64,000 nucleotides of DNA, taken from Heptranchias perlo. Taxonomy: Eukaryota. This document shows, piece after piece, positions 11,898-59,739 of the stretch (positions are counted from its first letter, which is position 1; each line of letters starts with the position of its first letter). Below the pieces are notes generated by a model that saw nothing but the letters and a program-made list of their open reading frames with translations, did no database searches and was not told the DNA's origin. Location: assembly GCF_035084215.1 (NCBI RefSeq), contig NW_027139559.1, positions 3,038,001-3,102,000 on the forward strand, written 5' to 3'. Position numbers and translations under genes: made by a program.

Positions 11898-11934
11898 TCA
11901 CAAGCTTTCGGAGCTTACCTCCTTCGTCAGGTGA
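11898..11934 (-). ncRNA. Second copy of the minimal hammerhead ribozyme in the inverted arm
   Basis: Exact reverse complement of 12513-12549. Confidence 0.8.
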
Positions 11935-12512
11935 GTCGTTGGTGTTCAGACAGGTTAGCCACGGAAAACATTACATCCCAGTATACTGAATACCCAATAG
12001 GTCAGATTACACAGACAAAGAGAGAAAGAGACCCGGAAGGCAGAGAGAGAGAAAGAGAGAATTTACAGTTGTATTAAAAACAGATAACTTTTTTTCCCCG
12101 CTGGTCGGGGAACACTTCAGCAGTCAAGAACATTCAGCCACCGATCTTCGGGTAAGCGTTCTCCACGGCGGCCTTCGAGACACACGACAACGCAAAATCG
12201 TCGAGCAGAAATTGATAGCCAAGTTCTGCACCCATGAGGACGGCCTCAACCTGGATCTTGGGTTCATGTCACGCTACACATAACCCCACCAGCGGGAAAA
12301 AAAGTTATCTGTTTTTAATACAACTGGACATTCTCTCTCTCTCTGCCTTTCGGGTCTCTTTCTCTCTTTGTCTGTGTAAACTGACCCATTGTGTATTCAG
12401 TATACTGGGATGTAATGTTTTCCGTGGCTAACCTGTCTGAACACCAACGACACCTTTGATTGCTGTGACCGTCTCCCAGCCTAATATATGCTATGCGATT
12501 TTAGAACCTCAC

Positions 12513-12549
12513 TCACCTGACGAAGGAGGTAAGCTCCGAAAGCTTGTGA
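12513..12549 (+). ncRNA. Minimal type I hammerhead ribozyme motif in the Penelope pLTR
   Basis: TCAC-CTGACGA-A-GGAG(gtaag)CTCC-GAAA-GCTT-GTGA: intact CUGANGA and GAAA core, stem II, stem I TCAC/GTGA, palindromic AAGCTT helix III. Confidence 0.8.
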
Positions 12550-25600: not shown

Positions 25601-28600
25601 TTACCAATATTGAATACAATGAGATATACCCCTTGATTTATTTTTAGTTTCTCTTCCAACACTGATATTTTATCCGCTTCCTGTACTGTGAACACGGACA
25701 CAAAGTGCTCGTTTAATAAATTCGCCATGAACTTGTTAACTATTACAGTATTAGTTGCATCTGTCTTTAATGGCTTGCATCTCACTGAGCCACACTCTTA
25801 TTCTTAATATATTCAGAAAATCATTTACTATTAGCCTTTATATTACTTGGAAGTTTTTCATTATTCCTTTTTTACAGCTATTAATATTTTCTTTGTGACC
25901 TTTTGTTGTTCTCTGTATTGTTCCCAGTCTGCTGGATTACAACTTTTCTGGGCATTGATGTAAGGTTAATATCCTACAACCGTGCTAGCAGTGAAACGTG
26001 TTTCAATAATTGTGCAGATCAGCTCAGTCAAGACAATAGGGAATCAATGAGTTGAAAAAGGGGGGAGTGGTCAGGTGAGGGGGAATTTAGAAATCTAAAC
26101 AGAAAAGTCAAGGCAATAGAGCAGTCGAGTGATTTGGGTAAAGAGAAGCAGAGTGTGACAGGAAGGGATAGAGAGTTTAACGGTAATCGCGCGTCAGTGA
26201 ATAAAGTCAAAGAAGGGAAAAAATGGTAAAAAATAAAATTAAAGGCGCTTTATCTGAATACATGAAACATGAAACATTCGTAACAAGATAAACGAATTCG
26301 TGGCACAAATAGGGATAAGTGGATTTGATAGCTTTTACAGAGACGTGGTTGAAAGGTGACCAGGATTGGGAACTAAATATTCCAAGGTAATTGACGTTTC
26401 GAAAAGACAGGCAGAACTTGGGATAGCCCTGATAATAAAGGATGACATAAGGACAGTAGTGAGAAAGGATCTTAGCTCGGAAGATCCGGAATTAGAATCA
26501 GTATGGGTGGAAATATGAAATAACAAGGGGAAGAAAACATTGCTGGGAATAGTTTATAGGCCCACTCATAGTAGCTATACCGTTTGACACATAATTAATC
26601 AAGAAATAAGATGAATTTGTAACAAAGGGAATGCAATAATCGTGGCGGACTTTAATCTTCATATGGACTGGACAATTCAAATTGGCAAAAGTAATCTGGA
26701 GGATGAGTTCATGGAATGTATTCGAGGCAGTTTTTTGAGAACAATGCATCATGGACCCAACCGGGGAACAGACTATTTTATTACAATCAGATGCGCAGTG
26801 GTGTGAAGTGTTTCGGGCTTTGCATTAGTTATGAAAGGGCCAGTGCAATGTTGGGGGTTAATGTGAAGAGTGCCCTCTGGGATGTATGATTGCAGCGGGT
26901 GAGATTGTCAATACAATAAATGAGAGTTGCAAAACCAGCTCCAAATGGCAGCACCAGTCACAGTATAACTACAGCTCAATAAGGAGCACGGTTTAAAGAT
27001 GCCCAAATTGTACATGTGGAACTCGTACACGCTTTATTCTAATATTACAAAGTATCTGCCCGAGGGAAGGAGCTCACGCAGCATCCCTTTGTCCCTGATC
27101 TTTAAGCAAGGTCCATGCGGCTGTGTCCCTCACTCAGGGAGCTGTAAATGCTGTAAATCACCCCACACATGTTGATCTGACACTGCTCCCTGTCGCAGCA
27201 TTGTACTCAGTGACTCCTCCTAGTTTTACTTCCTAAAAGTTATCTGAGAAACTCAGTCTATATGTCGCACGGGGCAGACCCGATCTTTGATATTAAGGCT
27301 CCGATAAGCACAGCAAATGGTTAATAATTGAGACTAGAACTGAAGAATATGAGCGGAGCAAACGAGTCCCTGTAACATTCCTCTTTCCACTACTTAACTG
27401 GGGAGTTCACCCGTTTAAAATAAACAAATCAAATTTTGTGCTAAAAAGGCGAACAGAGGAAACGCTTCCCAATGTTCAAAATGCTGATTCCCCAACGACA
27501 TCAACACGAAAATCAAGGTTGTGATGTCAGGTGGAATTAATGCTCATGATATCAGCAATCATAACTCTGACTGAGTTGATATCAGTAATAATCATAGGGA
27601 GCCAGCATGGAGTTGTAAAGGATATGTCACGCCTGAGGAATCTGATTGATTTTTTTAAAGAGGTGTCTAAAGTAGTAGACAGGGGAATATTTCTATGGCT
27701 GTTATTTATATGGACATCCAGAAGGCATCCGATAAAGCCCCTCATAAGAGACTGTTAGCTAAAGTTGAAGCTCGTGGAATTAATGGGAAATTATTGACTT
27801 TGTTAGGAAATTGTCTGAGGGGTAGCAGACAGAGAGTAGGGATAATGGGCAGGTACTCAAATTGGCAGTATGTGACTAGTGGTGTCCCACAGGGGCAGGG
27901 GTTGGGGCCTCAACTATTCACTGTAATTATTAACGACTTAGATGACGAGACAGAGAGCCACATATCCAAATTTGCCGATGACACAAAGACAGGCAAGATA
28001 ACAGTATGGATGGAAGCATAAAATTACAGAGAGATATTAATAGATTAAGTGAATGGGTAAAATTGTGGCAAATGGATTTCAATGTGGGCAAATGTGAGGC
28101 CATCCACTTTGGGCCGAAAAAAAAAATCAGAGTACATTCTAAATGTTGAAAAGCTCGAAACAGTGGAGCTCCAAAGAGACGGAGGCGTCCATGTGCAGAG
28201 ATCATTAAAATATCATGGACAGATACAGAACATAATCAAAAAGTTTAATGGAATTCTGGCCCTGATATCTAGAGGATTGAATATAAGGGGGTAGAATTTA
28301 TGCTACACCTAGAGAAAGCCGTGGTTAGACCACACCTGGAGAACTGTGTTCAGTTCTGGGCAATTCACCTTCGGAAGGACATATTGGCCTTGGGGGGAAT
28401 GCAGCGTAGATTTTCTAGAATGATACCTGGACTCCAAGAGTTAAATTTCGATGTGAGATTACACAAACTCGGGTTGTATTCCCTGTAATTTAGGATATTA
28501 AATGAGTGATTTGATAGAAGATTTCAAGATATTAAGGGGAATTGATAGTGTAGATCGGGAGAAACTATTTCCGCTGGTTGGGGAGTCGAGGACTAGGGGA

Positions 28601-28885
28601 CATAGTCAAAAAATTAGAGCCAGAACTTTCAGGAATGAAGTTAGGAAACGCTTCTACACGCAAAGGGTGGAGGAAGTTTGGAACTCTCTTCCACAAACGG
28701 CAGTTGATGATTGCTCAACTGTTAATTTAAAAGCTGAGATTGATAGATTTTTGTTAATCAAAGTGATTAAGTGATATGGGGCTAAGGCAAGTATCAGGAG
28801 TTAGGTCACAGATCAACCATGATTTCATTGAATGGCGAAACAAGCTCGAGGGGCTAAATGGCCTACTGCTGTTCCTAGGTTCCTA
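19680..28885. mobile_element. Patchwork of degenerate CR1 fragments on both strands (largest 23100-25190 + and 27590-28885 +)
   Basis: Repeated RT motifs (SGVPQG, KFADD, PHLEYC, FTQRVV..WN), interspersed with unclassified sequence. Confidence 0.75.
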
Positions 28886-31811: not shown

Positions 31812-31867
31812 CTAATGGTCTCTCCCTCTGCCCTATGCAAATCAGCTCACGCTCTCGCGATTTATAA
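31812..31867 (+). promoter_or_regulatory. IgNAR V promoter: heptamer-like element, octamer and TATA
   Basis: CTAATGG 31812-31818, perfect ATGCAAAT 31835-31842, TTTATAA 31861-31867; about 95-150 bp upstream of the leader ATG. Confidence 0.8.
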
Positions 31868-31961
31868 GGACGGTGCTCAGATACACACGGTTACACAGCA
31901 CAGTCGGTGTTGAGGTCTGGAGTTGGCCCTGTTTAAAGTGTTCACTGCTGGTGAAGAAACA

Positions 31962-32004
31962 ATGAATATTTTCTGGGTTTCGGTCCTTTTAGCCTCGTTA
32001 CCGA
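31962..32004 (+). CDS. IgNAR: IgNAR leader exon
   Basis: MNIFWVSVLLASLP plus phase-1 donor A|GTAAGT; resembles the IgNAR leader type MNIFLLSVLLAxLP. Confidence 0.93.
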
Positions 32005-32144
32005 GTAAGTGCATTTTATTAAAGAGATTAAATATTCCTTTAATAAAACTGTGTGGCTGCCTCCAAATTGTGGAAATTTCCTTGCTTTTAACTCTTGTAT
32101 TGTTTCAGAGACGCGATGTATAAAATATATTTTTCTCCATTCAG

Positions 32145-32429
32145 ATGCCTTCAGTGGAAGAGTAGTCCAAACACCGACAACGGCAACGAAAGAGGCAGGC
32201 GAGTGGCTGACCATCAACTGCGTCTTAACTGATTCTGGCGCTGCTAAGTTTCATAGCGCAAGATGGTACCGGCAATATCCGGGTACAATAGACAAGGTAG
32301 ACATATCCATTGGCGGACGATTTGTTGAATCGTTCAACTGGGGAGTAAAGTCTTCTCTGCGAATCAACGACCTGACAGTTGAAGACAGCGCCACTTATTA
32401 CTGCAAAGCTTACTACGGACTTGGTGTAC
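32145..32429 (+). CDS. IgNAR: IgNAR V (VNAR) exon, unrearranged, with extended 3' end
   Basis: Acceptor TTCTCCATTCAG; (N)[29 protein letters not shown]...WYRQ...[10 protein letters not shown]...[25 protein letters not shown]; lacks the CDR2 strands, as VNARs do. Confidence 0.96.
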
Positions 32430-32467
32430 CACAGTAATGAATCTTGGATTCCCGTAACACATAAACT
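32430..32467 (+). other. V-side recombination signal sequence, 22-bp spacer
   Basis: CACAGTA - 22 nt - ACATAAACT. Confidence 0.9.
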
Positions 32468-32792
32468 GTACCCAAACCTCTTAAAACAAAGTTAATACAG
32501 GTTATTCTCCAGGTGGCTAAAAACTTCACGGTTAAATACTCACTGTCTCTGTCAAGCATTGGCTAATATATTAAAAACTTTGTCTATTAATTTAGGTGAT
32601 TGTTGTGTATATGTTATAATCATATTAATAATGGAACTTTGATATTTCTCCAGGATTGGGATAAGAGACTGAGAATTCTAAACATCTGCTGGGATCCCAA
32701 TATAAAGGCAATGATTTGAATTATATTTACTGTATCTTTCAATCAATATCTTGGACTATCTGAAGGGATTTCTGTGACATTTGTAGCAATGG

Positions 32793-32868
32793 ATTTCTTG
32801 TGCTGATCTGAAACGATGTGTGGCTGCAGTGACACACTGACACAGTGACTCGGGCCACGGCACAAACC
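32793..32868 (+). other. IgNAR: IgNAR D segment (32821-32840) with 12/12 RSS
   Basis: ATTTCTTGT-12-CGATGTG | TGGCTGCAGTGACACACTGA | CACAGTG-12-GCACAAACC. Confidence 0.88.
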
Positions 32869-33181
32869 TCTCCAACAGTTATTTGTTTTACTACTCGTGA
32901 AGATGACTGCTTAATGTGCTTTCTTCCTTATGGTTGTTACTTCATAAAGTTTGAAATCAATTCCAATTCGATCTTTGGTGATAATCTAGCTGAATTCCAT
33001 GATATTAAATCAAGGGATTATCTTTTTCAGTGCTACAGGAGTTCGCATTGCACATTGTAAATATCTGGTTCGACAGAAACTGACGGAAAATTAAGATAGG
33101 TTAATGACTGCAGTGTATTGGAAAGGTCATTGCATCCGTGTTGTTTTGGTGTATTTATTACCGCACCTTAATTTCAATGAC

Positions 33182-33220
33182 CCTTTTTGAAGGAGGCTGA
33201 CTGGGAGCTGAAAGACTGTG
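33182..33220 (+). other. J-side recombination signal sequence, 23-bp spacer
   Basis: CCTTTTTGA - 23 nt - GACTGTG. Confidence 0.85.
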
Positions 33221-33277
33221 GCATTTACGGTTACTGTTCCTCTATTGGAACTGGCACCGTGCTGACTGTGAACTCTG
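33221..33277 (+). CDS. IgNAR: IgNAR J segment
   Basis: IYGYCSSIGTGTVLTVNS plus G|GTAAGT; GxGT-VLTVN is a VNAR FR4 motif. Confidence 0.93.
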
Positions 33278-33949
33278 GTAAGTGACCTCTCTTGCTACTT
33301 TATCAATAAGATTTTGTTCAGAGAAGATATGAAGAATTAGCATTCTCGTTAAAATGCTCTTAAGTGCACAGGGCAATAGCCGAAACTGTTTTTGGAGGTT
33401 CGGTTAGCTTCGCTGTCAGTTTATTTGGTTTAAACTTAATAATCTTTTTCAAAAGTGATTATGCTCGAGAATAAAACGAACCTATGTTTAAATATATAAC
33501 AATCCTGTATTTAAATACATAACGAACCTCAAAACAAGCCTGTTTACCACCTATGGATCATTTAAGATGCTGATTTATATAGTTATGAATCTCGCCGGTG
33601 TGATAGTTTAAACAGTTAAAACACACCCAGCCTAGTGCTGTTATTCTCCTTAGTGAGGCGGCGCAGCATATCCCTAATATACATTATTTCTGATTCGAAG
33701 AATTAATAACATTCTGTGGCGAGGAAAGTTTGCTGCAAACAAGGAATTAATTCAACGTGTAATTTTATGAAATATTGAGTACGAATTACTTTCCCCCTCT
33801 AAAATCACCCCTTATTCAATTAAAAAAAAACTGTTAAATTAATACCGGTACCGAACCTTCGAATATATTGTCCATTCGAATCTTGACATTTGTGACCCTG
33901 GATTAACGGCGCATGCGTCACAGTGACCCAGACAGAAAACAAAATGATT

Positions 33950-34232
33950 GGGGGTGAAATTGGTCTGATCGAGGAGCGCGGAACGGGCGATAGCAAATCG
34001 GCCGCCCGTATACACCGCGTCAGATTTTCCTTTATATTGACTTGGAAAATATTCGGAATTTTCTTCCGATCAAACCAAGTAAAACGGACAGTGAAACTAT
34101 CCGAATCTCCAAAAGAGCTCGAACTATCGTTCTGTCAAATTCAGTGGAAATAAGGCCTGGCGGGGTGTAAAACAGGCCGCCGATTCGCAAGGATCCCGTG
34201 TCGCGTTACTGGCGTAGGACAATTTCATCTCC
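33950..34232. mobile_element. Possible MITE / non-autonomous DNA transposon
   Basis: Imperfect terminal inverted repeats GGGGGTGAAATTG ... CAATTTCATCTCC around a CpG-rich core. Confidence 0.4.
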
Positions 34233-34409
34233 TATACTGTAGGTCTGTGGGAGGCCTGTTTCCATGGAAGCCAGTCTCCTGGACAGTCGCATTTCGGACA
34301 ACAGAAACACTCTGTGTTTAAGATTGTGCCGAGTAGCAGAGAACATTGAAATTGCGGTGGGTTTGAGTGTGAGAAGTGAAATTCTCTTTTAATGTCTGTG
34401 TACAGAAAT

Positions 34410-34524
34410 AAATGTAAGGAGTCTTACAACACCAGGTTATCGTCCAAAAGCTGTTGGACTATAACCTGGTGTTGTAAGACTCTTTACATTTGTCCACCTC
34501 AGTCTATCACCGGCATCTGCACAT
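34410..34524. mobile_element. Tiny Penelope pLTR-end hairpin insertion
   Basis: About 38-bp inverted arms (34410-34491) of the same CTTACAACACCAGGTTAT family as 11811-12603; flanked by AGAAATAAA on both sides. Confidence 0.75.
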
Positions 34525-35040
34525 TATAGAAATAAAGTAAACATTATTGTATGCCTCGTGGAGAATCGTGAAGTCTTTGACTCACTGTTTATACATTTTA
34601 CTGTCCGTTTCCTTATTTAATTTGAAGAAACAATGTGATTGTTTGGAGCCTGAGTGTTGGTCTGATAGACTGGATATTCAGTCAGCATTTCAAAGAGAGG
34701 AGAATCCCAGAGCTGATGTGCAGAGTAAGGGGGATGTTTTTTGCCATTCCATGGTCCGGATATCGCTTGCCTGGAGATTGGACAGGTTAAGCGTCGGTGC
34801 AGATGATGGGAGGGGCGGGTCCGCATACCTGGGTACCAAGCGACACTGAATCCGAGAAAATATGTCCCTAAAAATCATAAAACATTGAAGTCGATCTACA
34901 TAATTCCATTAAATACCCCCTGGTCAGGTACAATATGGGTTAGGTAGAAAAGAAGAATGTGTTTGCATTTATAAACGCATCTTCCATGACCTCGCGACGT
35001 TCCAAAGCGCTTTACAGCCAATGAATTTGTCGAGCAAATC

Positions 35041-35990
35041 CCCCTCTACACTGTGTCATACAACACTCCCAGTTCAGGAGCACTAGGGGTCAGATAGAGG
35101 GTACAGCTCCCGCTACACTGTCCCACCAAACACTCCCAATGCAAGTACAGCACAGGATAGATACAGGGTAAAGCTCGCTCGAGAATGTCCCGTCAAACAC
35201 TCCCAGTTCAAGAGCAGTAGGGGTGAGACAGAGGATACAGCTGCCTCGCCACTGTCATACATCACTCCCAGTTCAAGAGCAGTAGGGGTTAGACAGAGGG
35301 CACAGCTTCCTCTACACTGTGTCATACAACACTCCCAGTTCAGGAGCACTAGGGGTTAGATAGAGGGTACAGCTCCCGCTATACTGTCCCACCAAACACT
35401 CCCAGTGCAAGTACAGCACAGGATAGATACAGGGTAAAGCTCGCTCGAGAATTTCCCGTCAAACACTCCCAGTTCAAGAACAGTAGGCGTTAGACAGACG
35501 GTACAGCTTCCTCTACACTGTGTCATGCAACAATCCCAGTGCAAGTACAGCACAGGATAGATACACAGTAAAGCTCCCTCTACGCTGTTAAAACAAACGG
35601 TCAGAGGGCAGGTACAGCACGGGGTTAGATCCAGAATAAACGTCCATCTACACTGTCCCATCAAACACTCCCACCGCAGGTACACGGTTAGATATAGAGC
35701 AAAGCTCCCTCCACAATGTCTATCAAATACTCCCAGGTCAGGTACAGCAAGGGTAAGATACAGAGTTACGCTCCCTCTCCGCTGTCCCATCAAACAATCC
35801 TAGAGCAGGTACAGCTCGGGTTAGATACAGAGGAAAGCTCCCTCTACACTGTCCCATCAAACACTCCCAGAGCAGGTACTGCACGGGTTCGATACAGAGT
35901 TGCGGACCCTCGACAGTCTCCCATCAAACACTCCCAGGGCAGGTACAGCTCCGGTTAGATAGAGGGTAAAGCTGCTCTACACTCTATCCA
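35041..35990. repeat. About 67-bp minisatellite in the J-C1 intron, about 14 copies
   Basis: Unit like CTACACTGTCCCATCAAACACTCCCAGGGCAGGTACAGCACGGGTTAGATACAGAGTAAAGCTCCCT; a higher-order duplication with about 266-bp period is visible. Confidence 0.93.
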
Positions 35991-36879
35991 TAGGAGAAGG
36001 TAGATTACCAACCTTACCGGATACCAGAGCAGATTACCTGAATGGCCCCTGACATGGAACCTGAGAAAATGTCCAGCATAAAGCTCCCAAAATGTGGCAG
36101 TCAGTAACATTGGAGAATAGTGTGTTTGAACGGGAGCAACGAGATGCAGATTGTACTAGAAACACTGGTGAAGCGAAAAGTTTCATCACAGACATAGAAC
36201 ACGGCACTTATCGAAAGGAAAAACCTTCTAAGAACAGAAGAATGTGCGCGGGCAGAAACTCCGATTGGTTCCTTTGCACGAATCCACGCAAATTGTTCTC
36301 CCATGAATTCCCTCCGAAAACAACTGATACTCCCCAGTTTAAATAATCCTAAATCTTGCAACTTTCTCTTCCGAAATCACAAGACCATCCACTTAATATG
36401 TACGTTCCACTAAACCAGATGTCAACTGGTTTATTAAAAACGGGTTAACCCCTCTCGTAGGATAGTCAAGCGTTAACCGTGGTTCCCTGAGACGGCCAAC
36501 AGTGATTTTTAGGGTTAATTTCCTTCCTTGCCTCCTCTGAGCGAAAACAAGGAATGAAGCAATAGTATTAATATCTCTGTCAATGGTATTCACTTCACCA
36601 CTATCATTGGGAGATCTTTTGATATAATCACCCAATTCACGCAAAGATTGCAAATTTAGTACTTGCATTCTGTCGCCGTTGTTCAGATAAATAACTTGTT
36701 CACTTCCACCTCGTAGTTTCGTTAATTCATCTTACATTGTTTCAAAGATGTGTATCATTGTTTTAGTTTTGTAAAGCATCTGAAGTTGTCCTTTGAGATG
36801 TATCTCTTTCTCTCTGACTTATCCATTTTTTCAGCAGCCATTATTTTCCAGGCTCTTGTAGGAATCCAGCCCAACCCTG

Positions 36880-39800
36880 CCAATCATAGAATCATAGAAT
36901 GATACAGCACAAAAGGAGGCCATTCGGCCCATCGGTCGTGTGCCGGATCTTTAAAGCTAGCCAATTAGTCCCACTCCCCTATTCTTTCCCTACAGAACTG
37001 CAAATGCTTTCACTGCAATTCATGATCGAATTCCCTTTTGAAAGTTATTATTGAATCTGCTTCTAACACCCTTTAAGGCAATGCATTCCAGATCTTTGAA
37101 ATTCTCTGCTTAAAAAAAAATCTCCTCATCTCGCCTCCAGTTGCTTTGCCAATGACCTTAAATCTGTGTCCGCTGGTTACCGATCCGCCTGCCACTGGAA
37201 ACAGTGTTTCCTTATTTACCCTTTCGAAACCTTTCATGATTTTCAACACCTCGATTAAATATCCCCTTAACCTTCTCTGCTCTAATGAGAACAACCCGAG
37301 CTTCTCTAGTTTCTCCACGTAACTGAAATCCCGCATCCCTGGTACCTGGTAAATCTCCTTTGCACCCTCTCTAAAGCTTTGATATCCATCTTAAAGTGTG
37401 GTGCCCAGAACTCGACACAATACTCCAGCTGGGGCCTAAGCAGTGATTTCTGAAGGTTTAACATAACTTCCTTGCTTTTGTACTCTATGCCTCTATTAAT
37501 AAAGCCCGGGATCCCGTATGCTTGTTTAACAACCTACTTAACTTCGCGTGCGACCTTCGAAGATTTGTGTGTATATACCCCGAGGTATCTCTGTTCCTGC
37601 ACCCCCGTTAATATTGTACCAGTTTGTGTATGTTGTCTCTCCTCATTCTTCCTACCAAAATGCATCACTTCCAACTCACTGCGCTAAATGTCATTCGCCA
37701 TGTGTTTGCCCATTTCATCAGTCCGTCTATGTCCTCCTAAAGTCTGTTAATATCCTCCACATTGATTTCTACATTTCCGAGCTTCGTGTCATCTTCGTGT
37801 CATCCAGGTCATTAATATATATCACAAAGAGCAGTGCTCCTAATACCGACCCCTGGAGAACACCACTGTATACTTCCCTCCAGTCTGAAAAACAACCGCT
37901 TACCGCTGCTCTCTGCTTTCTGTCACTTAGCCAATTTCGTATCTAGGCAGCCACTGCCCCTTTAATTCGATGGGCTTCAGTTGTGTTATGCTATGTTCCT
38001 TGCACATTGAAAATATATCTATTTGATTGTATATCTCACTATAAGACATTCAGAGCGAGAAACCTCTCTGGCCCGTTGCACTTATTGCGAATTTGGGTCG
38101 ACGCTTCGGAATGATTCATCATCTATTCATTTTAGTCATTGGCAAATTTTGAGGAACACATTCCAGAATGGCTGGAGCCTGATTTTAATAAATTAGCCCC
38201 AGCCTTCTAATCTTCAAGTGAAAACAATGTGTTCTGTATCTCGCTATGCTTCTTTCCAACCAACGTGAAACGGCCCTCTCCCAGCCGTTGGTTTATAAGT
38301 CCATTGACATTTGGATTGAGGGATTTTGAAAATGTTATTGAGGAAGTTGTGGAGAAGATTTTTCGGAAGTTCCTTGGATAAGTATAAATACTAAAGAGTA
38401 AAGTTAAAAATTGGAACCAACTAACCTAAGGATGGGATTAGATTAGAGATGTAAAAGGGAATCTTCTCCAGAAAGGTGAATGAATCGCAGATGTTAGACA
38501 AGGACTTAGTCTCGGTTTCTACAGAAAAGTGTGTCCGTGGGAATGGAAGTGTAGAGCGGGAGAGTGAGGTGCAATTAGATTGAATAACTAGAGATAAGTA
38601 AGGAGTGCTGAGAAGATTGTTGGAACTCATTCTATCCTCGAATGTTGAGAACAGACAAAAAGCAAATAGCAGATGCTCGGCCCACGAATATTCAAACATC
38701 CTAGGATGTGGAATTTGTGCCAGAGGACCGAGGTAAAATCTTTCTCAAAGAAGGGGAAAGGTTTACATAGGGTAAACGCGGGGCCGTCGGCTTACCGTCA
38801 GTGCTGGATCATCTTCTAGAGTCATATTACTGGAGAAAATTAACATTCACTTACAGAGGCATTGTTTCATTAAAGACAGCTAGCACGGATTTGTAGAAGG
38901 CAAGTTCTCCCTGATAAATTTAGTTTGACAGGTCTTCGAAGAACTCTACTCATTCCCATGTTTAATTCTGGTCACTGCACCCCAGGAAAGTTAGATTGGC
39001 CTTGGAGTGGGTCGACCGCAGATTCACCAGAATAATACATGGGACAAAAGGGTTAAAATATGAGGCAAGATTGAATGGATCAGGATTGTATTCCCTTTAT
39101 TATAGAAGATTAATGGGTGATCAAATTAATGTGTTTAAGATGACAAAATCATTTAACAGGGTAGATAGAGAGAAACTATTGACTTTGTTGGGGGAATGCA
39201 GAACAAGAAGGCATAACCTTAAAATTAATGCTATGTCGTGTCAGGTGGTTGAAACGATACCAAATAATGGGTTTGTTAATCAAGTAAAGTTGTTCATTTT
39301 CAATATTCGCAAAGGACTTTGCAGAGGAAGCACAACATTACATTATCAAGGAATATAAAAAAGGAACAGTAAAGTATTCTACAGACACATAAATAATCAA
39401 AGGACAGAGTTAGGGCCACAAAGGGAAGCACAAGATAAACTCGCAGGTAATGGGCAGCGACATGGCAGAAATATTGAATAGTTACTTTGCCTCAGTATTT
39501 ACCAGGGAGAATAATAAGGTGGGCAGAATATTAGAAGAAAAGATTTTTAAAAACATAAGACTTTTAAGATAGAAAATGGGGGAGATAATTGATCAACTAA
39601 GCAAGCATGGAGAGGATCAAACCCCTGAACCGTATGGATTTCATCGGCTCATAATAAAAGAAGCTAGGGAGGAGATAGCAGAGGCACCATTAGATATATC
39701 TAAAAATTCATTAGAAAGGGGAATAGTGCCACAAGACTGGTGGACAGCTAATGTGAAAACTATATTTTAAAAAGGAGATCAGAACAAGTCCAGGGAATTA

Positions 39801-42300
39801 TAGACCAGTTAGCCTAACGTCGGTGTTAGGAAAGATAATGGAATCTTTGCTCAAAGATGTAATAGAAAAACATCTAGAAAGCGAAAATAAAATAAAGAAT
39901 AGTCAGAAAGCAAAGCTATGCTTGACCAACCTTACTGAATGCTTTGACGAAGTAACAGGAAGGTTAGACAAGGGTAATTTAGTAGATGGAATATGTTTGG
40001 ATTTTCAAAAGACATTCGATAATGTAGCACATTGTAGATTCATGACTAATGTTAGAGCATGTGGAGTCAGGGGACAGGTAGCAGAATGGATAGCAAGCTG
40101 GCTACAAAATAGAACACAGAGAGATTGGTTCAAGGGTAGCTGCTCAGAATGGGAGAATTTGGGAAGTGGCTTTTCACAGGGATCAGTGCTCGGGCCACAG
40201 TTGCTGACAATTTATATTAACAATTTGGACTGGGAATCGGGGTGTGTGGTTCATACAAACGTAGAATATGTCAGGTTGCAAGAAGACATTATTAAACTTG
40301 AAGAATGGGCGTGTCATTGGCAAATTAATTTCAATATATGTAAGTGTGAGGTGGTGCATTTTGTTTCGGAGAATAAGGAGGACACATACTGCTTGGATAA
40401 TAAGAGTTAACATGGGGTAGAGGAGAAAAGGGATCTCGGGGTATAGCTATACAAATCAGTAAAAGAGGCGACGCATGTTAATAAGGCCATAAAAAGGCAA
40501 ACAAAGCAATGATTTTCATTTCTAGAGGAATAGAATTGAAAAGGAGTGACGTTTTGTTAAACTTGTATAGAATCTGGCTTTTACCACACTTGGAGTACAG
40601 TGCACAGTTGTGATTTCAATATTATAAAAAGATACAGAGGCATTGAAGAAGGTGTAAAAAAGATTCAAAAGGATGATACCAGAACTGAGAGAATATACCT
40701 GTCGGGAAAGATTGAACAGGCTGGGGCTGTTTTTTTCTGGTAAAGAGAAGGTTCAGGGGTGACCTGATTGAGATATTTAAGATAATGAAAGGGTTTGATA
40801 GGGTAGACGTGGAGAAAATGTTTCCACTTGTGGGGGAGTCCAAAATTAGACATCATAAATATAAGGTATCCAGTGGGGAATTCAGGAGAAACTTCACTCC
40901 CCGATGAGTGGTAAGACTGTGGAATGCGCTAACATAAGGAGTATTTGAGGTAAATAGCATCGCTGCATTTAAAGGGAGACTAAATAAATACACGAGGGAG
41001 AAAGGAATAGAAGGATATGCTGATGGGGTGAGATGAAGTGGGGAGGGAGGAGGCTCATGTGGAGCATAAATTCCGACATAGACATGTTGGGCTGAATGGC
41101 CTGTTTCTCTGCTGTATTCTCGATATAACTGGATGATTTGAGCAACCTCAGACAGTTTAGTTGATTGGGCAGGTCGATACCAGATAACACGCAACATGGA
41201 GAATATAAAGTGATAAATTTGGAGAGGAAGAATGTAAGAAAATATTCACTAAATTGCAACACTTTCAAAGTAGAAGAAGAACAGAGAGACATAGAGCTTC
41301 AGATTGATAGATCTTTAAATGTAGGAGGCTGTGTCAGCAAGGTTAGAGAGTAATAAAGCAAGGACATAACATTAGATTTATAAATCATTTGCTTAGGCCA
41401 AAGTTGAAGATTGTGTCCAGTTTCGGTGCCTTAATTTACGTAGGATGTCAAGGCCACGGAGAGGGGGCAGAAGAGATTCAACACGATTATGCAAAGGATG
41501 AGAGGCGTTAACTATGAGAAGAACATAACAACAACAACTTGCATTAAAATAGCTCCTTTAACGGAGTAAAACCGTCACAAGGCGCTTCACAGTAACGTTA
41601 ACAATCAAAATTTCACACCGAGCCGCATAAGGGATATTGGGACAAATGACCAAATGATTGCTCAAAGAGGTAGGTTTTAAGGAGCGTCTTAAAAAGGAGA
41701 GAGAGAATGAGAGAGGCGGAGTGGTTTAGCGAGGCAGTTCCAGAAATTAAGGCCTTGGCTGCTGAATGCACGGCCGCCAATTGTGCGGCAACGGAAATCG
41801 GGGATCGGCAAGAGGCCAGAATTCGTGGATCGCAAACATTTCGGAGGGTTGTGGGGCTGGAGAAGGTTCCAGAGAAAGCGGGGGGAGGGGCGATGCTATG
41901 GAGTGATTTGTAAACAAGGTTGAGAATTGTAGGATCGGTGGGTTGGGAACGGAGACAAACGTGGGCTCTTTTCTTGAGATCGAGAAAGTTAAGAGGCAGT
42001 AAAGTTTTAAGTGTTTTCGATAAGCTAAATTGAGAGAAACTATTTGCCGTGGTTGATAACAGGCGGGTATAAGTTTAAATGGAGATAAACGATTTGCCGT
42101 GGTTGATAACTAGTGGGTATTAGTTTAAATGGAGAGAAACTATTTACCGTGGGTTATAACTAGTGGCTATTAGTTTAAATGGAGAAAAACTATTTACCGT
42201 GGGTTATAACTAGTGGGTATAAGTTTAAAGGGAGAAAAACCATTTACCGTGGTTGAAAACTAGTGGGTATAAGTTTCAGATCATCAGCCAAAGATGAATG
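36880..42300. mobile_element. CR1/L2 fragments filling the J-C1 intron (36880-37980 -, 38300-41520 +, L2 3' end 41520-41940 -)
   Basis: RT motifs LDFQKTFDNV, SQGSVLGP and LEKLGLFSLEQRRLRG. Confidence 0.8.
42031..42277. repeat. About 50-bp tandem repeat of a LINE 3' segment, 5 copies
   Basis: GGAGAGAAACTATTTACCGTGGGTTATAACTAGTGGGTATTAGTTTAAAT repeated. Confidence 0.88.
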
Positions 42301-43365
42301 GAGATATTAGTAGATTTATTTTTATTATGGAGAGGGCTGTTAGGACACAGAACCTCCTACCAAAAACAAAAAAACAATGCTGTTTGCAGAATCATAGTAT
42401 CATTGGAGGTACAGCACAGGCCGGAGGCCATTCGGACCATTGTGCCTCTGCTCGCTCTTTGAAAGAGCTACCCAATTAGTCCCACTCACCTGCTCTTTCC
42501 CCATGGCCCTGTAAATTAGTTTTAAATAGGAAGTAGGCAAATATTTGAGAAACAAGGTATCGGGAAAGAAGAGGCGAATGGAACTGCGCACATCCGGCCC
42601 CTGATTATAGGTCCCTTCAGGTGAATAGATATAAAATCACAAGCCAAGCCAGGAATGTACAATTTCCCCATGTACACTCCCGCCGTGCGGCCTGGGCGGG
42701 CCCAGCGGAGTTTCTACTGCTAAGCGGATAGCTCTGACACAGAGCCCGCAGTGTCGCGATGGGCCGAAAGAATCCTTCTGTGCTGTAAAATATTTTAATT
42801 CGATCCCTCCCTCACCTGACATTACCAAAACCATTGCTGTCTCTGACCTCTGATGTTACAAACTCGTTGCTGCAATCGTCTAGAAATCCAAACAACTCCT
42901 TCCTTAAGAAACGCCGGTTGCAAAATATTCCTCGGTAAAGTGACGACATGAAACTGCTCCATCCCCAGGAAAATTAAAGCATGTTACTGGTAACAATAAT
43001 CGATGTACATTTAATATCTGACTGTCACTACACACCACTGCACAGTATCGATATTTTTTCGCATAGCACATTGATCATTATTCACTCCGAAATTAACAAG
43101 TGATAAGAACATTATTTGAATGTTCGTTCATGACCGGAACTCATTTATCCCAACACGCCCACTGTAATATCAGCTCATTTAAACCCAGCTTCAATGCATC
43201 CATGTGTGTTAAATTTGGCGGTGTCCGTGGCTGCGAGCAACGTGATATTGACTAGATAATCTGTTTTCGGTGTTGGTTGGGGAATAAGTATTGACCAGGA
43301 CTCGATATAAACGGTTTAATTGTCATTATAGAAGCGAGTAAGACTTTCTTTTTTAATTTTCTCAG

Positions 43366-43683
43366 TAAAACGTACTCCACCGATCATCAGTCTCCTCTAC
43401 TCTGCAAGTGACGAACTGACAGCAAAAGGTTTTGTGCATCTGGTTTGCCTCATCAGCGAATATCAGCCAGAAAGCATTGCAGTGAGCTGGCAGAAGAACG
43501 GGAACGCTGTACAATCGGGCTTTACAACCACATCCCCAATTAAAAATTTGAATGGAGATTTCAGCTCCAGGAGCATCCTTAAAGTCACCCTGCAGGATTG
43601 GAACAGCGGGTCTCTTTACAGCTGCCAAGTGTCCCATTCTGCAACCAACAGTAACCAGCGGAAAGACATTAGAAAAACATCAG
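43366..43683 (+). CDS. IgNAR: IgNAR C1 exon
   Basis: (V)KRTPPIISLLYS...FVHLVCLISEYQPESIAVSWQKN...YSCQVSHSATNSNQRKDIRKTS; 318 nt, AG/GT, phase 1. Confidence 0.96.
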
Positions 43684-44409: not shown

Positions 44410-44847
44410 TCAATCTTTCTCTCTTTCTTTGTCTCCCTCTCTCTCTCTCTCTCTCTGTCTGTCTGTCTCTCTCTGTGCCTCTCTCTCTCTGTTTGTATCT
44501 CTCTCTCCCTCTGGTGTCTCCCTATATCTGTCTCTCTCTATTTGTCCCTCTCTGTCTCTCTCTGTTCCTTTCTCTCTCTCTCTGTCCCCCTTTCTCCGTC
44601 TTTCTCTGTCTTTTTCTCTGTCCCTATTTCTCTTTCTATATATATATATATATATATATATTTCTCTCCCACCCTGTCTCTCTGTAACTGTCGTCCTGCC
44701 TCTCAGTTTTTCTTTTTCCCTGTCCTACTCTCTCTCTGATTCTCTCCATCAGTCCCTTTCTCTGCCTCTCTCCCTATCTGTCTGTCACGCTCTGTCTCTC
44801 TATGTCCCTCTCTCGCTCTATGTCTTTGTTTCTCTCTCTCTCTCTTA
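44410..44847. repeat. (CT)n-rich polypyrimidine tract with embedded (TA)n
   Basis: Direct inspection. Confidence 0.95.
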
Positions 44848-45057
44848 GCTTCGTTGAGTTGTACATAGTTTTGATTCGACTCAACATACGCGCAAACACC
44901 AAATTATTTTTAAAAATTCAATAATAATCAGTGAGAGACATATTCACATCATACCGTGTTATGGATTATCAATGAAATTGAAATCCTTGATAAATTTCCG
45001 AAACCATCAACACTAAATCATCGCCCCGATTCTGAATCTCTCGTTTCTCACTGACAG

Positions 45058-45360
45058 AGCTCACGGTATTTCTCAGAGATCCTTCCGTTGTCGAAGTTTG
45101 GATCAATAAAACTGCCACCCTGGTGTGTGAAGTGGTCTCTCCGGTTCCCACTGAGGTTACCATCTCTTGGACAGTGGGTGGAAAGATAAGGAATGAAGGA
45201 GTTCAAATTGAACCAGCTAAAAAGGATGGAAACCAGTACCTGACAATCAGCCACTTGACCAGCAGCGTGGCAGAGTGGGATAGCGGGGTTGAATACTCGT
45301 GTTCTGCACAACAGGGTCAATCATCTCCTCCGGTATTAAAACGAATCGGAAAGATAAGAG
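45058..45360 (+). CDS. IgNAR: IgNAR C2 exon
   Basis: (E)LTVFLRDPSVVEVWINKTATLVCEV...SWTVGGKIRNEGV...EWDSGVEYSCSA...KIR; 303 nt, phase 1. Confidence 0.96.
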
Positions 45361-45436: not shown

Positions 45437-45754
45437 TCGAGCCAGTCAAACCAAAGCTCCGCCTCCTTCCTCCATCACCAGAGGAGAGTCAAAGTAGGAG
45501 CGCCCCGACTCTCACATGTCTGATAACAGGATTCTACCCTGACAACATAATCGTTTCCTGGGAGAAGGACGGAGCTGCTTTAAGCACGAACGTTACCAGT
45601 TTCCCCAGTGCTCTTGAACAGGACCTAACCTTCAGCACAAGGAGCAACCTCATTTTGCCTTCAGAGGAATGGAAGAAAGGATCAAGATACACCTGTATCG
45701 CCTCACATCCCCCTTCACAATCCGACGTGAAGGCGACCATCCGCAATCTGAAAG
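45437..45754 (+). CDS. IgNAR: IgNAR C3 exon
   Basis: (V)EPVKPKLRLLPPSPEE...LTCLITGFYPDNIIVSWEKDG...EWKKGSRYTCIASHPPSQ...IRNLK; 318 nt, after a 76-nt intron. Confidence 0.96.
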
Positions 45755-50182: not shown

Positions 50183-50503
50183 AAGTATGTCATGGGACAG
50201 ACATTTCTGTCACCATACTGAACCCTTCTTTTGAAGAGATCTGGACCAAACGAACAGCGACCATTGTTTGTGAAGTCGTTTATAGCGATTTAGAAAACGT
50301 CAGCGTGTCCTGGCAAGTGGATGGGAGTCGGAGAACGGAAGGAGTGGAGACTCAGGCTCCTGAGTGGAATGGAAGTAAATCCACAATCGTTAGTAAACTG
50401 AAAGTCACCACGACAGAATGGGGCAGTGGGGTTGAATATTTGTGCTTTGTGGAAGACATTGAATTGCCAACACCAGTGAAAATCTCCACCAGAAAAGTAA
50501 AGG
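50183..50503 (+). CDS. IgNAR: IgNAR C4 exon
   Basis: (E)VCHGTDISVTILNPSFEEIWTKRTATIVCEVVYSDLENVSVSWQVDG...YLCFVEDIELPTPVK; 321 nt; N-terminal extra Cys. Confidence 0.96.
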
Positions 50504-51631: not shown

Positions 51632-52005
51632 TTGACGGAATGTATCCTCCGAAAGTCTACGTCCTGCCTCCATCAGCGGTCGAGATTGAAACTGAGAAGA
51701 CGGCAACCCTGGTGTGTTTAGCAACCGGCTTTTACCCTGCCGAGATTTACGTCGCGTGGTTGGCCAATGACACCCTTTTGGATTCAGGTTACACCACCCA
51801 ACCGGACACGGAGAAGGAAAGTGGTTCCAGCTCCATTGTCAGCAGACTGAGAGTCACCGCAGCGGAGTGGAACAGCGGGACCACTTACTCCTGTTTAGTG
51901 GGACACCCGTCTCTCACAATGAATTTACACAGAAGTATAAATAAATCTTACGGTAAACCTATTTTAGTTAATTTTCCATTTATTCTAGCCGACAGTTTTC
52001 AATAG
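51632..52005 (+). CDS. IgNAR: IgNAR C5 exon with secretory tail; internal donor after 51952 for the membrane form
   Basis: (V)DGMYPPKVYVLPPS...LVCLATGFYPAEIYVAWLANDTLLDSGY...YSCLVGHPSL...NKSY|GKPILVNFPFILADSFQ*; donor G|GTAAAC. Confidence 0.96.
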
Positions 52006-56770: not shown

Positions 56771-56928
56771 AAACCCCTCAAGTAAAGGACGATCCAGAAG
56801 ACCCCGAGGTAGAGGAAGAAGGATTAGAAAACTTATATGAGGATGGCAGCACGGCATCAACAGTGATCGCTTTCGTGATTCTGTTTATTCTCAGTATGCT
56901 GTACAGTACATTTGTAACCGTACTTAAG
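56771..56928 (+). CDS. IgNAR: IgNAR transmembrane exon TM1
   Basis: (E)TPQVKDDPEDPEVEEEGLENLYEDGSTASTVIAFVILFILSMLYSTFVTVLK|GTAATA; acidic spacer plus membrane-Ig LF..S..YSTFVT motif; phase matches the C5 internal donor. Confidence 0.93.
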
Positions 56929-57809
56929 GTAATATCATCTTTCAATAGCGCAGTGACATTGAGTAAATTCATTAGAAAGCTGAGTTAATACCTTAGATAT
57001 AACCTGGGTACAAATGATGAACAAAATATTCTAATACAAGCATAATGAGCATAACATTTTTAGATTGGACTCCATTACTCGTTCCTATGTGATTAACTGG
57101 CACATTTAATAAACCTCCTGAATATGATAACACCAGAGGAACGCAAGTATACGACAATTATTGGGACATATAAGCAGAATAATAAACCAATAATGGGAAG
57201 TATTACTTTGCATCTCGATTGTGGAAAGTTGGAAGCACACTAAAAGGGAAAGAGATTATCGAATGATTCCGAGTGATAATCCAGAAATAGTTAGCAATAT
57301 GGTGATAAAGAAGCATCCTGGGAATAGTGAGCGTGACGTATTTGAAGTCACCATCAAGTTTGCGAGGGAGAAAGGAGATCAGCAAACAAAGGTTTAGCAC
57401 TTAAACCTGGCTCACTGTGAAGATATGAGGAAAGCATTGACGGAGGAAGAATGGGATAAAATTTCAGTCGGTAAAACGATGGACAAATATTGCAATTGAT
57501 TGAAGAAAGTGATCAGCGAGCACAAAAATATATAACCCCATAAATGGAAATTCTAAATGAATGATGTAATTATGGTGAAAGAGAACAGTTCGGGCCAGAA
57601 TTGAACAAAAGGGGGAAAGTTTTGTCAAAGCGAAGACAATGGCAAGTTTGACAGCCAGGACTATTGTCAAAAACAAAAGGATATCATGAAATTATGAAAT
57701 GCAACGTCAGGTGGACAATTATTACAGTGGACATAAAGTATAATATTAAATATATTATCGGTACATCAAGAAAAAGAGAATGACAAAAGTGCAGATGGGA
57801 TTGTTACAT

Positions 57810-59710: not shown

Positions 59711-59739
59711 TAAAAAAACATATACATTTTATATATACA

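What the first reader, a model, noticed from the sequence alone, without database searches (positions are those of the whole stretch)
32821..33246. Germline-programmed cysteine pair inside CDR3, one from D and one from J, on a framework with no extra Cys
Seen: V has only the two canonical Cys. D (TGGCTGCAGTGACACACTGA) has one fully stop-free forward frame, GCSDTL; frame 1 has an internal TGA and frame 3 ends in TGA. The 57-nt J encodes IYGYCSS before IGTGT. A precise D-J join is in frame and gives G-C-S-D-T-L-S-I-Y-G-Y-C-S-S-I-G-T-G-T. Established: type I VNARs tether CDR3 to FR2/FR4 Cys, types II/III to a CDR1 Cys, and type IV (IIb) has none. Inference: this cluster makes a long CDR3 (up to about 24 aa), mostly germline-encoded and closed by its own disulfide, an architecture outside the standard types.
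Basis: partly seen in the sequence, partly recalled or inferred. Interest (0 to 1): 0.82.

Follow-up and report, generated by a model that had tools for sequence, protein, structure and literature searches.

The report
Shark IgNAR cluster with D/J cysteines
This is an intact shark single-domain antibody (IgNAR) gene cluster in which the only free D segment and the J segment each carry a cysteine codon, so many of its products should have a cysteine pair inside the binding loop; no rearranged transcript of this cluster was found, and antibodies with such a pair have already been reported as proteins.

Summary
The sequence observation is correct. Window 31835-56931 (+) holds one complete, unrearranged IgNAR heavy-chain cluster. 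It has an Ig octamer, a leader, a NAR-type V with only the two canonical Cys, one D flanked by 12-bp-spacer RSSs, a 57-nt J with a 23-bp-spacer RSS, five intact C1-set exons and a TM exon. D reads WLQ*HT / GCSDTL / AAVTH*. J reads IYGYCSSIGTGTVLTVNS.

First, the V end (YYGLGV) is a germline-fused D, so this is a reduced VD-D-J cluster. Second, a precise V-D join puts D in the AAVTH* frame and ends in a stop, so the Cys frame needs junctional editing.

My neutral junction simulation keeps the J Cys in about 100% of productive joins. It puts D in the Cys frame in 47-71% of them and gives exactly two CDR3 Cys in 39-90%. The 12/23 rule makes D obligatory.

The weak point is expression. RNA-like contigs from one animal show this V spliced to its leader, but every V-to-J joint comes from paralogous clusters with a Cys-free J.

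CDR3-only Cys pairs are already described at protein level in dogfish and bamboo shark libraries, and type I already pairs a D Cys with a J Cys. Scan notes report the same pattern in another cluster of this genome (unchecked).

Verdict: a new germline variant of a known kind; the disulfide is inferred.

The parts
31835..31842 (+). Ig promoter octamer ATGCAAAT, followed by a TATA-like TTTATAAGG about 20 bp downstream
   Evidence: exact octamer, about 125 bp upstream of the leader ATG
31962..32004 (+). Leader exon (MNIFWVSVLLASLP, ends in phase 1), donor GTAAGT
   Evidence: The splice 32004->32145 (GT..AG) is present in RNA-like contigs of runs X5 and X6 with 0 mismatches.
32145..32410 (+). NAR-type V proper, up to ...YYCKA. 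It has only the two canonical Cys, no CDR1 or FR2 Cys, and is one codon shorter than solved VNARs at KS-SLRI.
   Evidence: Pfam V-set, 1.6e-09; VNAR structures, 1e-26 to 1e-20; alignment gap at KS.SLRI
32411..32429 (+). V tail TACTACGGACTTGGTGTAC (YYGLGV plus 1 nt): germline-fused D sequence
   Evidence: table 7. In DNA run X1 and run X7, paralogous contigs have a 5' RSS (..GACTGTG) and a short D start running into sequence that matches from 32418 or 32423 onward, including the same downstream RSS.
32430..32467 (+). RSS after the fused V-D: heptamer CACAGTA, 22/23-bp spacer, nonamer ACATAAACT
32793..32820 (+). 5' RSS of D: nonamer (reverse complement ACAAGAAAT), 12-bp spacer, heptamer CGATGTG
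32821..32840 (+). The single free D, TGGCTGCAGTGACACACTGA. Forward frames WLQ*HT / GCSDTL / AAVTH*; inverted frames SVCHCS / QCVTAA / SVSLQP.
32841..32868 (+). 3' RSS of D: CACAGTG, 12-bp spacer, nonamer GCACAAACC
33182..33220 (+). J RSS: nonamer (reverse complement TCAAAAAGG), 23-bp spacer, heptamer GACTGTG
33221..33277 (+). J, 57 nt, (x)IYGYCSSIGTGTVLTVNS. The Cys codon TGT is at 33235-33237; donor G|gtaagt.
   Evidence: From 33246 on it is shared with paralog J segments seen in transcripts.
43366..43683 (+). C1 exon
   Evidence: C1-set, 1.8e-21; IgNAR C1 4q97, 8.7e-40; splice sites
45058..45360 (+). C2 exon
45437..45754 (+). C3 exon
50183..50503 (+). C4 exon
51632..52005 (+). C5 exon with secretory tail (..GKPILVNFPFILADSFQ*). 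Internal donor for TM splicing after 51952.
56772..56931 (+). TM1 exon (..ETPQVKDDPEDPEVEEEGLENLYEDGSTASTVIAFVILFILSMLYSTFVTVLKV); approximate boundaries

Best explanation
This is a structurally intact, promoter-bearing, unrearranged IgNAR cluster of reduced layout, VD-D-J-C1..C5-TM. The V was joined to upstream D sequence in the germline, so only two RAG joins remain: VD to D, and D to J.

The 23 | 12-D-12 | 23 spacer arrangement forces the single D into every rearrangement. The J carries a hard-wired Cys codon four codons before its G-T-G-T motif and 14 nt from its coding end. Practically every productive product therefore carries that Cys on a V framework that offers no partner.

The D supplies a Cys in its only stop-free forward frame. 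The stops in the other two frames enrich that frame among productive joins. Trimming 2 nt from the D 3' end in the AAVTH* frame also creates a junctional Cys codon (CACT+GC).

The expected main product is a long CDR3 of about 19-24 aa, largely germline-encoded, with two Cys separated by about 6-9 residues. I infer that these close the loop with an intra-CDR3 disulfide, by the same logic that makes type II clusters pair a CDR1 Cys with a D-encoded Cys.

Shown: the gene anatomy, the frames, the RSS logic, and V transcription with leader splicing. Modelled: the frame and Cys frequencies. Inferred: that the cluster rearranges productively in B cells, and that the two Cys bond to each other.

The confidence of 0.45 is for the whole statement including the inferred disulfide. 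For the anatomy alone it is about 0.95.
For: Anatomy and intactness:
- One V, one D and one J with compatible RSSs.
- Ig octamer, and all exons open with splice sites.
- V is a VNAR by comparison with solved structures. C1 matches IgNAR C1. All five C exons are C1-set.

Transcription:
- Leader-V splice seen in RNA-like contigs, with a 247-nt V stretch at 0 mismatches.

Germline V-D fusion:
- Supported by paralogous free-D contigs in the DNA run.
- Even DNA depth of about 33 across V, the intergenic stretches and J (table 8).

Neutral junction simulation over six trimming/N-addition settings:
- J Cys kept in about 100% of productive joins.
- D in the Cys frame in 47-71%.
- Exactly two CDR3 Cys in 39-90%.
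- Median Cys-Cys spacing 6-9 residues.

Precedents:
- Non-canonical Cys encoded by D define the VNAR types (PMC6312525).
- VD-J and pre-joined D configurations are known in shark Ig and IgNAR clusters (PMC5192425, PMC4279169, PMC8692893).

Unchecked lead: scan note s1-883478 reports the same D-Cys/J-Cys pattern in another cluster of this genome.
Against: - No rearranged transcript of this cluster was found. All V-to-J joints in the three RNA-like runs leave V at 32408/32410 (right after CKA, without the YYGLGV tail) and enter J at 33246 or later. The sequence in between belongs to paralogs (J ..YYQYYDG[AT]GT), and none shows this D or the J 5' half.
- The exact-match V contig has depth of about 138, against 10^4-10^5 for paralog V sequence in the same run. 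An exact-match contig in run X7 reads through the V RSS (32418-32456). What is seen may therefore be sterile germline transcription.
- All runs come from one sample, and contigs drop rare variants.
- The V is odd for a NAR V (Trp in GEWLTINC, one codon missing at KS-SLRI), and the secretory tail lacks Cys and an N-glycosylation sequon.
- A precise V-D join gives the non-Cys frame with a stop.
- Disulfide connectivity is untested. I could not fold a joined V-D-J because joined sequences are not accepted by the tools.
Confidence: 0.45

Rival explanations
1. The cluster is a marginal or decaying paralog. It is transcribed from its V promoter only as sterile germline RNA and contributes little or nothing to the antibody repertoire. 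On this view the J Cys codon is neutral divergence, and the D Cys is the ordinary Cys-rich content of NAR D segments.
For: - No rearranged contig uses this D or the J 5' half, although IgNAR transcripts are very deep in run X5.
- An exact-match read-through of the V RSS is seen in X7.
- V depth is about 1% or less of paralog V depth.
- The FR1 Trp and the one-codon deletion are unusual next to solved VNARs.
- The secretory tail has no Cys or sequon.
- Sterile transcripts of unrearranged shark Ig loci are known (PMC5192425).
Against: - All coding segments of the cluster that I examined (leader, V, D, J, five C exons, one TM exon) are open, with usable splice sites.
- All four RSSs keep the critical CAC/GTG ends and correct spacers, and the octamer is exact.
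- A paralog whose J-flanking RSS region still lays on this stretch at 90% identity or more has a J whose 5' coding part is 7 nt shorter and differs in 4 consecutive codons. That looks like more than drift.
- Scan notes report the same Cys pattern in another cluster (s1-883478, unchecked).
- Contigs cannot show absence.
Confidence: 0.3
2. The cluster is functional, but the J Cys does not pair with a D-encoded Cys. It stays free, bonds to an N-region Cys, or forms an inter-domain or inter-chain bond. D frame usage would then be unconstrained, and the product would be effectively a type IV/IIb-like VNAR with an odd Cys.
For: - In the neutral model 7-57% of productive joins have only the J Cys.
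- VNARs with a Cys in only one of CDR1 or CDR3 ('type IIb') make up about 41% of a bamboo shark naive library (PMC12865624). Odd Cys counts are therefore tolerated.
Against: - In types I-III the germline non-canonical Cys are matched by CDR3 Cys (PMC6312525, PMC6576789).
- The D's stop pattern enriches the Cys frame without needing any selection.
Confidence: 0.15
3. The V-D fusion, and hence the 'one D' layout, is not inherited. It would be a partial somatic rearrangement from lymphocyte DNA captured by the assembler. The true germline cluster would then be a canonical V-D-D-D-J whose other D segments could supply or remove Cys.
For: A follow-up on another IgNAR locus of this genome could not exclude this kind of artefact (scan note s1-882807). 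I did not see a listed DNA contig spanning 32409-32455 at 0 mismatches (the table is truncated).
Against: - DNA contig depth is flat at about 33 across V, intergenic DNA, D and J.
- An exact contig, 32418-32456 in X7, covers part of the tail and the V RSS, though not the V/fused-D junction at 32410/32411.
- Scan notes report at least three more clusters with the same V(+D)-D-J layout (s1-883181, s1-882675, s1-883187). This fits an inherited, duplicated structure.
- Germline VD-J joins are a known shark feature (PMC5192425, PMC4279169).
Confidence: 0.05

Closest known systems
Nurse shark type I IgNAR (VNAR with FR2 and FR4 Cys bonded to two CDR3 Cys)
   Same: A Cys near the G-x-G-T motif that would pair with a D- or N-encoded CDR3 Cys (PMC6312525; that FR4 is J-encoded is my inference). 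The type is set by the germline placement of non-canonical Cys.
   Different: No FR2 Cys here (..FHSARWYRQ). The J Cys lies 4 residues before the first Gly of G-T-G-T, so it is inside CDR3 and not in FR4. Only one extra disulfide is possible. There is one free D instead of three.
'Atypical type 1' spiny dogfish NAR V (binder P4BH8), and the even-Cys CDR3 class of bamboo shark naive libraries
   Same: No FR2/FR4 Cys, two Cys inside CDR3, and a proposed intra-loop disulfide (PMC2213646). About 15% of bamboo shark naive sequences have an even CDR3 Cys count (PMC12865624).
   Different: Those are protein or library observations, and P4BH8 comes from a semi-synthetic CDR3 library. No germline source was given. 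Here one Cys is fixed in J and the other is in the only open frame of an obligatory D.
Partly germline-joined IgNAR clusters (nurse shark type III with D1-D2 fused; bamboo shark IgNAR2/5/6 with pre-joined D)
   Same: Fewer rearrangement events and a more germline-determined CDR3 (PMC4622739, PMC8692893). VD-J joins are known for shark Ig in general (PMC5192425, PMC4279169).
   Different: Here the fusion involves the V end itself (V-D), which leaves one D. The type III hallmarks, a CDR1 Cys and an adjacent Trp, are absent.
Type IV / IIb VNAR (e.g. spiny dogfish E06, PDB 4HGK)
   Same: It is the closest solved V framework (E 9.9e-27), and the V segment has only the canonical Cys pair.
   Different: Type IV is defined by having no non-canonical Cys at all. 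This cluster's J puts one into nearly every product.

Membership tests
IgNAR heavy-chain cluster | NAR-type single V domain | tested here: met
   phmmer against the PDB: the top 31 hits are all VNARs apart from one non-VNAR construct, with VNAR E-values from 1e-26 to 1.5e-18. Pfam V-set 1.6e-09.
IgNAR heavy-chain cluster | Five C1-set constant exons, plus a secretory tail and a TM exon, downstream of one V-(D)-J | tested here: met
   Five C1-set exons. C1 matches IgNAR C1 4q97 at 8.7e-40. Splice sites, tail and TM1 found. Paralog transcripts splice J to a C1 that begins like this one.
IgNAR heavy-chain cluster | Three D segments (V-D1-D2-D3-J; four rearrangement events) | tested here: not met
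   Only one RSS-flanked D lies between V and J. The V end carries fused D sequence. The literature allows 'up to three' D segments and pre-joined forms (PMC5192425, PMC8692893).
IgNAR heavy-chain cluster | RSS spacers compatible with ordered joining within the cluster | tested here: met
   V 22/23; D 12 and 12; J 23. Direct V-J joining is disallowed by the 12/23 rule.
VNAR type I | Cys in FR2 (just before WYR) and in FR4, each bonded to a CDR3 Cys | tested here: not met
   FR2 reads ..HSARWYRQ with no Cys. The J Cys is 4 residues upstream of G-T-G-T, not adjacent to it.
VNAR type II / III | Cys in CDR1 (type III also has an adjacent invariant Trp) bonded to a CDR3 Cys | tested here: not met
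   CDR1 reads [13 protein letters not shown], with no Cys and no Trp.
VNAR type IV (IIb) | No non-canonical Cys anywhere in the domain | tested here: not met
   The germline J encodes a Cys that was retained in about 100% of simulated productive joins. This was tested on the germline only, not on an expressed protein.
CDR3-only Cys pair VNAR ('atypical type 1') | Exactly two non-canonical Cys, both in CDR3, forming an intra-loop disulfide | tested here: inconclusive
   The germline potential is shown: 39-90% of modelled productive joins have two CDR3 Cys. No rearranged transcript was found. The disulfide cannot be tested with these tools.

The most novel reading that the evidence does not exclude
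This cluster, and the sibling reported by the scan at +3.68 Mb, would define an inherited fifth VNAR class. It would be a semi-invariant, VD-prejoined IgNAR whose long CDR3 is mostly germline-encoded and closed by a D-Cys/J-Cys disulfide, that is, a hard-wired knob-like loop independent of the framework. It might have been borrowed by gene conversion from the long two-Cys J segments that the scan noted at NAR-TCR loci of the same genome.
Probability: 0.2. Interest if true: 0.75.

Novelty: new variant of a known kind. Interest (0 to 1): 0.5.

Why it matters
VNAR types are defined by where the germline places extra cysteines, and those types decide loop shape, stability and which epitopes can be reached.

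A cluster that fixes one Cys in J and offers the partner in an obligatory D would be a germline route to a self-closed CDR3 on a plain, type IV-like framework. That would give a natural template for disulfide-constrained loops that do not depend on CDR1 or framework Cys, which is useful for VNAR engineering and humanisation.

It would also add a case of germline V-D joining in IgNAR, next to the known D-D joins. This bears on how RAG activity in germ cells reshapes shark Ig clusters.

If the cluster turns out to be silent, it is only a curiosity of a large multigene family.

Tried and rejected
1. NAR-TCR instead of IgNAR. Rejected: the exons downstream are five C1-set domains, with C1 matching IgNAR C1 plus a secretory tail and TM. 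There is no supporting TCR-delta V.

2. Further hidden D segments between V and J. The RSS scan of 31900-33400 found only the four expected RSSs. It also found a weak CACTGTC site at 32541 without a partner RSS, and a cryptic CACACTG/22-bp site overlapping the D 3' end.

3. A second cluster in the window. None found.

4. Word-based protein search with the V domain. It gave 1 candidate and no hit, so that collection appears to hold no VNARs. This says nothing about relatives.

5. A 20-aa J query against the PDB. The only hit was an unrelated Fab heavy chain with ..YGYCDVWGTGT.., which is uninformative.

6. Findings index searched with this J region's DNA (33190-33285).

7. The original NAR papers (Roux 1998, Diaz 1998, Hsu 2006, Criscitiello 2006) are not held. 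The canonical NAR spacer pattern and the NAR-TCR J sequences therefore could not be checked against primary sources.

8. Not done on purpose:
Exons were searched one by one. The junction simulation built joins only inside the script and printed only counts.
- The large HMMER search was not spent, because 50%-identity clustering would collapse VNARs and hide the CDR3 detail.

Full report
**What is there**

The stretch lies inside a single, complete, unrearranged immunoglobulin heavy-chain cluster on the + strand.

- An exact Ig octamer, ATGCAAAT, sits at 31835, followed by a TATA-like TTTATAAGG.
- The leader exon (31962-32004, MNIFWVSVLLASLP) is spliced GT..AG to the V exon at 32145. RNA-like contigs of runs X5 and X6 carry this splice with no mismatch.
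- The V exon (32145-32429) is a V-set domain. Its best matches among solved structures are shark VNARs: 4hgk_C at 9.9e-27, 7spp_C at 4.5e-26, 2i26_N at 6e-25.
- About 10 kb downstream lie five intact C1-set exons: C1 43366-43683, C2 45058-45360, C3 45437-45754, C4 50183-50503, and C5 plus secretory tail 51632-52005.
- C5 has an internal donor at 51952 for a TM exon at about 56772-56931.
- C1 matches the solved IgNAR C1 domain 4q97 at 8.7e-40.
- The cluster is therefore IgNAR, not NAR-TCR. No second V or J exists in the window.
- The rest of the window is largely LINE-type reverse-transcriptase debris.

**Checking the observation**

- The V has exactly two Cys, in ..LTINC.. and ..ATYYC...
- Between V and J there is exactly one RSS-flanked D, 32821-32840, TGGCTGCAGTGACACACTGA. 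Its forward frames are WLQ*HT, GCSDTL and AAVTH*.
- J (33221-33277, 57 nt) reads IYGYCSSIGTGTVLTVNS before the G|gtaagt donor.
- A precise D-J join in the GCSDTL frame is in frame; the junction codon AGC gives Ser.
- The RSSs are convincing:
  - after V: CACAGTA, 22/23-bp spacer, ACATAAACT;
  - before D: a 12-bp-spacer RSS ending ..GTG at 32820;
  - after D: a perfect CACAGTG, 12-bp spacer, GCACAAACC;
  - before J: a 23-bp-spacer RSS ending at 33220.
- With 23 | 12-D-12 | 23, V cannot join J directly, so D is obligatory. That statement rests on the established 12/23 rule.

First, the V does not end after YYCKA. It continues with TACTACGGACTTGGTGTAC (YYGLGV plus one base).

- In the DNA run X1 and in run X7, contigs from paralogous loci show a 5' RSS (..GACTGTG) followed by a short D start. 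That D start runs into sequence matching this window from 32418 or 32423 onward, including the same downstream RSS (table 7).
- The V tail, together with the RSS that follows it, is therefore the 3' part of a D that was joined to V.
- DNA contig depth is flat at about 33 across V, the intergenic stretches, D and J (table 8).
- Scan notes list at least three more clusters of this genome with the same V(+D)-D-J layout (s1-883181, s1-882675, s1-883187; unchecked), as well as canonical V-D-D-D-J clusters (s1-883223, s1-883253).
- Together these points favour an inherited join, a known peculiarity of cartilaginous-fish Ig genes (PMC5192425, PMC4279169). It is also known for D-D joins in IgNAR (PMC4622739, PMC8692893).

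Second, the V tail leaves one extra base. A precise V-D join therefore reads D as L-AAVTH-stop, not as GCSDTL. With no trimming and no N addition anywhere, no productive product arises. 'Germline-programmed' is thus too strong as written, because the Cys frame needs a net +1 or -2 nt at the V-D junction.

**How strongly the layout favours a Cys pair**

I simulated joins with exponentially distributed trimming (mean 1-5 nt) and N addition (mean 1-6 nt) at both junctions. Only counts were printed. Among productive products:

| Measure | Result |
|---|---|
| J Cys codon retained (it lies 14 nt inside J) | about 100% |
| D read in the Cys frame (the other two frames carry stops) | 47-71% |
| Exactly two CDR3 Cys | 39-90% |
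| Only the J Cys | 7-57% |
| Median residues between the two Cys | 6-9 |
| Mean CDR3 length | 19-24 aa |

Part of the two-Cys fraction comes from the AAVTH frame. Losing 2 nt at the D 3' end removes the stop and creates a TGC codon across the junction.

These are model numbers with assumed parameters, not data. They do show that the cluster is biased toward a Cys pair even before any selection. Because the V framework offers no partner, the functional logic matches type II clusters, where a germline CDR1 Cys is matched by a D-encoded Cys (PMC6312525).

**Expression**

This is the weak point. The three runs guessed to be RNA (X5-X7) come from the same sample as the DNA runs and are available only as contigs.

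- They contain this V at 0 mismatches, spliced to its leader (247 nt; depth about 138 in X5).
- Paralog V sequence in the same run is 10^4-10^5 deep.
- An exact-match contig in X7 reads through the V RSS (32418-32456). Some or all of the signal may therefore be sterile germline transcription, which is known for shark Ig loci (PMC5192425).
- Every V-to-J joint leaves V at 32408/32410, directly after CKA and without the YYGLGV tail, and enters J at 33246-33255.
- The loose ends and in-between letters show paralog J segments (..YYQYYDGTGT, ..YYQYYDGAGT) and paralog CDR3s, one with no Cys and one with a single Cys.
- No contig shows this D or the J 5' half in a joined form.
- Contigs drop rare variants, so this is not proof of silence.

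One further observation: a paralog whose J-flanking RSS region still lays on this stretch at 90% identity or more has a J whose coding 5' part is 7 nt shorter and differs in four consecutive codons (Y-Q-Y-Y-D here Y-C-S-S-I). The J 5' half has thus changed more than its flank. That hints at conversion or selection rather than drift, but the evidence is thin.

**Comparison with what is known**

- By strict definitions this cluster fits none of them. It has no FR2 Cys and no FR4-adjacent Cys (not type I), no CDR1 Cys or Trp (not types II/III), and a J Cys that excludes type IV.
- The protein architecture itself is not new:
[quoted passage not shown] They called it atypical type 1; it came from a semi-synthetic library (PMC2213646).
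  - A naive bamboo shark library has about 15% of sequences with an even CDR3 Cys count, said to allow intraloop or interloop bonds (PMC12865624).
  - About 30% of 1.2 million nurse shark VNARs fit no classical type (PMC6312525).
  - A horn shark 'type V' has also been proposed (PMC6576789).
- In type I, one of the two extra bonds already links a D- or N-encoded CDR3 Cys to the FR4 Cys (PMC6312525; FR4 is J-encoded by definition).
- In the papers I could search, I did not find a germline basis of this kind: a Cys fixed inside the CDR3 part of J, together with a single obligatory D whose only open frame has the partner, on a V-D-prejoined cluster.
- The primary NAR germline papers were not available, so I cannot exclude an earlier description.

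**Verdict**

| Question | Assessment |
|---|---|
| Observation | Confirmed |
| That this is an intact, reduced IgNAR cluster with the stated germline Cys codons | About 0.95 |
| That its main product is a VNAR with an intra-CDR3 D-Cys/J-Cys disulfide | About 0.45 |
| Class | New germline variant of a known kind |

Interest is moderate. It would rise if repertoire data show productive use with an even Cys count, and if the sibling cluster reported by the scan (s1-883478, unchecked) conserves both codons.

Exons were examined one by one.

Noticed in passing
window 32411-32467: The V exon ends with D-derived sequence (TACTAC + GGACTTGGTGTAC) followed by the 23-bp-spacer RSS. In paralogous loci the same sequence follows a free D. 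This is a germline V-D join, leaving a VD-D-J cluster with two rearrangement events instead of four.
   Followed up: partly
window 51953-52005: The secretory tail reads ..GKPILVNFPFILADSFQ*. It lacks both a Cys and an N-x-S/T sequon (NFP is not one), so the tail-mediated multimerisation signals described for shark Ig tails (PMC8692893) are missing.
   Followed up: partly
window 32833-32870: The last 8 nt of D contain a second heptamer-like CACACTG. With a 22-bp spacer and the nonamer-like ACAAACCTC, this forms a cryptic 23-type RSS overlapping the real 12-type RSS. It may be a relic of a 12/23-flanked ancestral D.
   Followed up: no
window 32300-32360: The V is one codon shorter than all solved VNARs at ..GVKS-SLRIN.. 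(HV4/FR3 border) and has Trp where they have Ser (GEWLTINC against GESLTINC). These are private marks that could serve as specific primers.
   Followed up: partly
window 33221-33245 against paralog contigs: Paralog J segments seen in transcripts read ..YYQYYDG[A/T]GT and are 7 nt shorter. This J differs in four consecutive codons (YCSSI against YQYYD), while a paralog's upstream RSS flank still lays on this stretch at 90% identity or more.
   Followed up: partly
window 7700-12900, 27700-28800, 39800-40400, 58750-61800 and others: There are many fragments of LINE-type reverse transcriptase. Three tested ORFs gave Pfam RVT_1: two clear hits (1.1e-24 and 2.7e-11) and one below Pfam's cut-off (3.8e-4). 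They lie on both sides of the cluster and inside its introns.
   Followed up: partly
window 44429-44848: A CT-rich simple repeat, translating as SLSLSL.., lies in the C1-C2 intron.
   Followed up: no
window 33278-43365: The J-C1 intron is about 10 kb and the C3-C4 intron about 4.4 kb, whereas C2 and C3 are only 76 bp apart.
   Followed up: no
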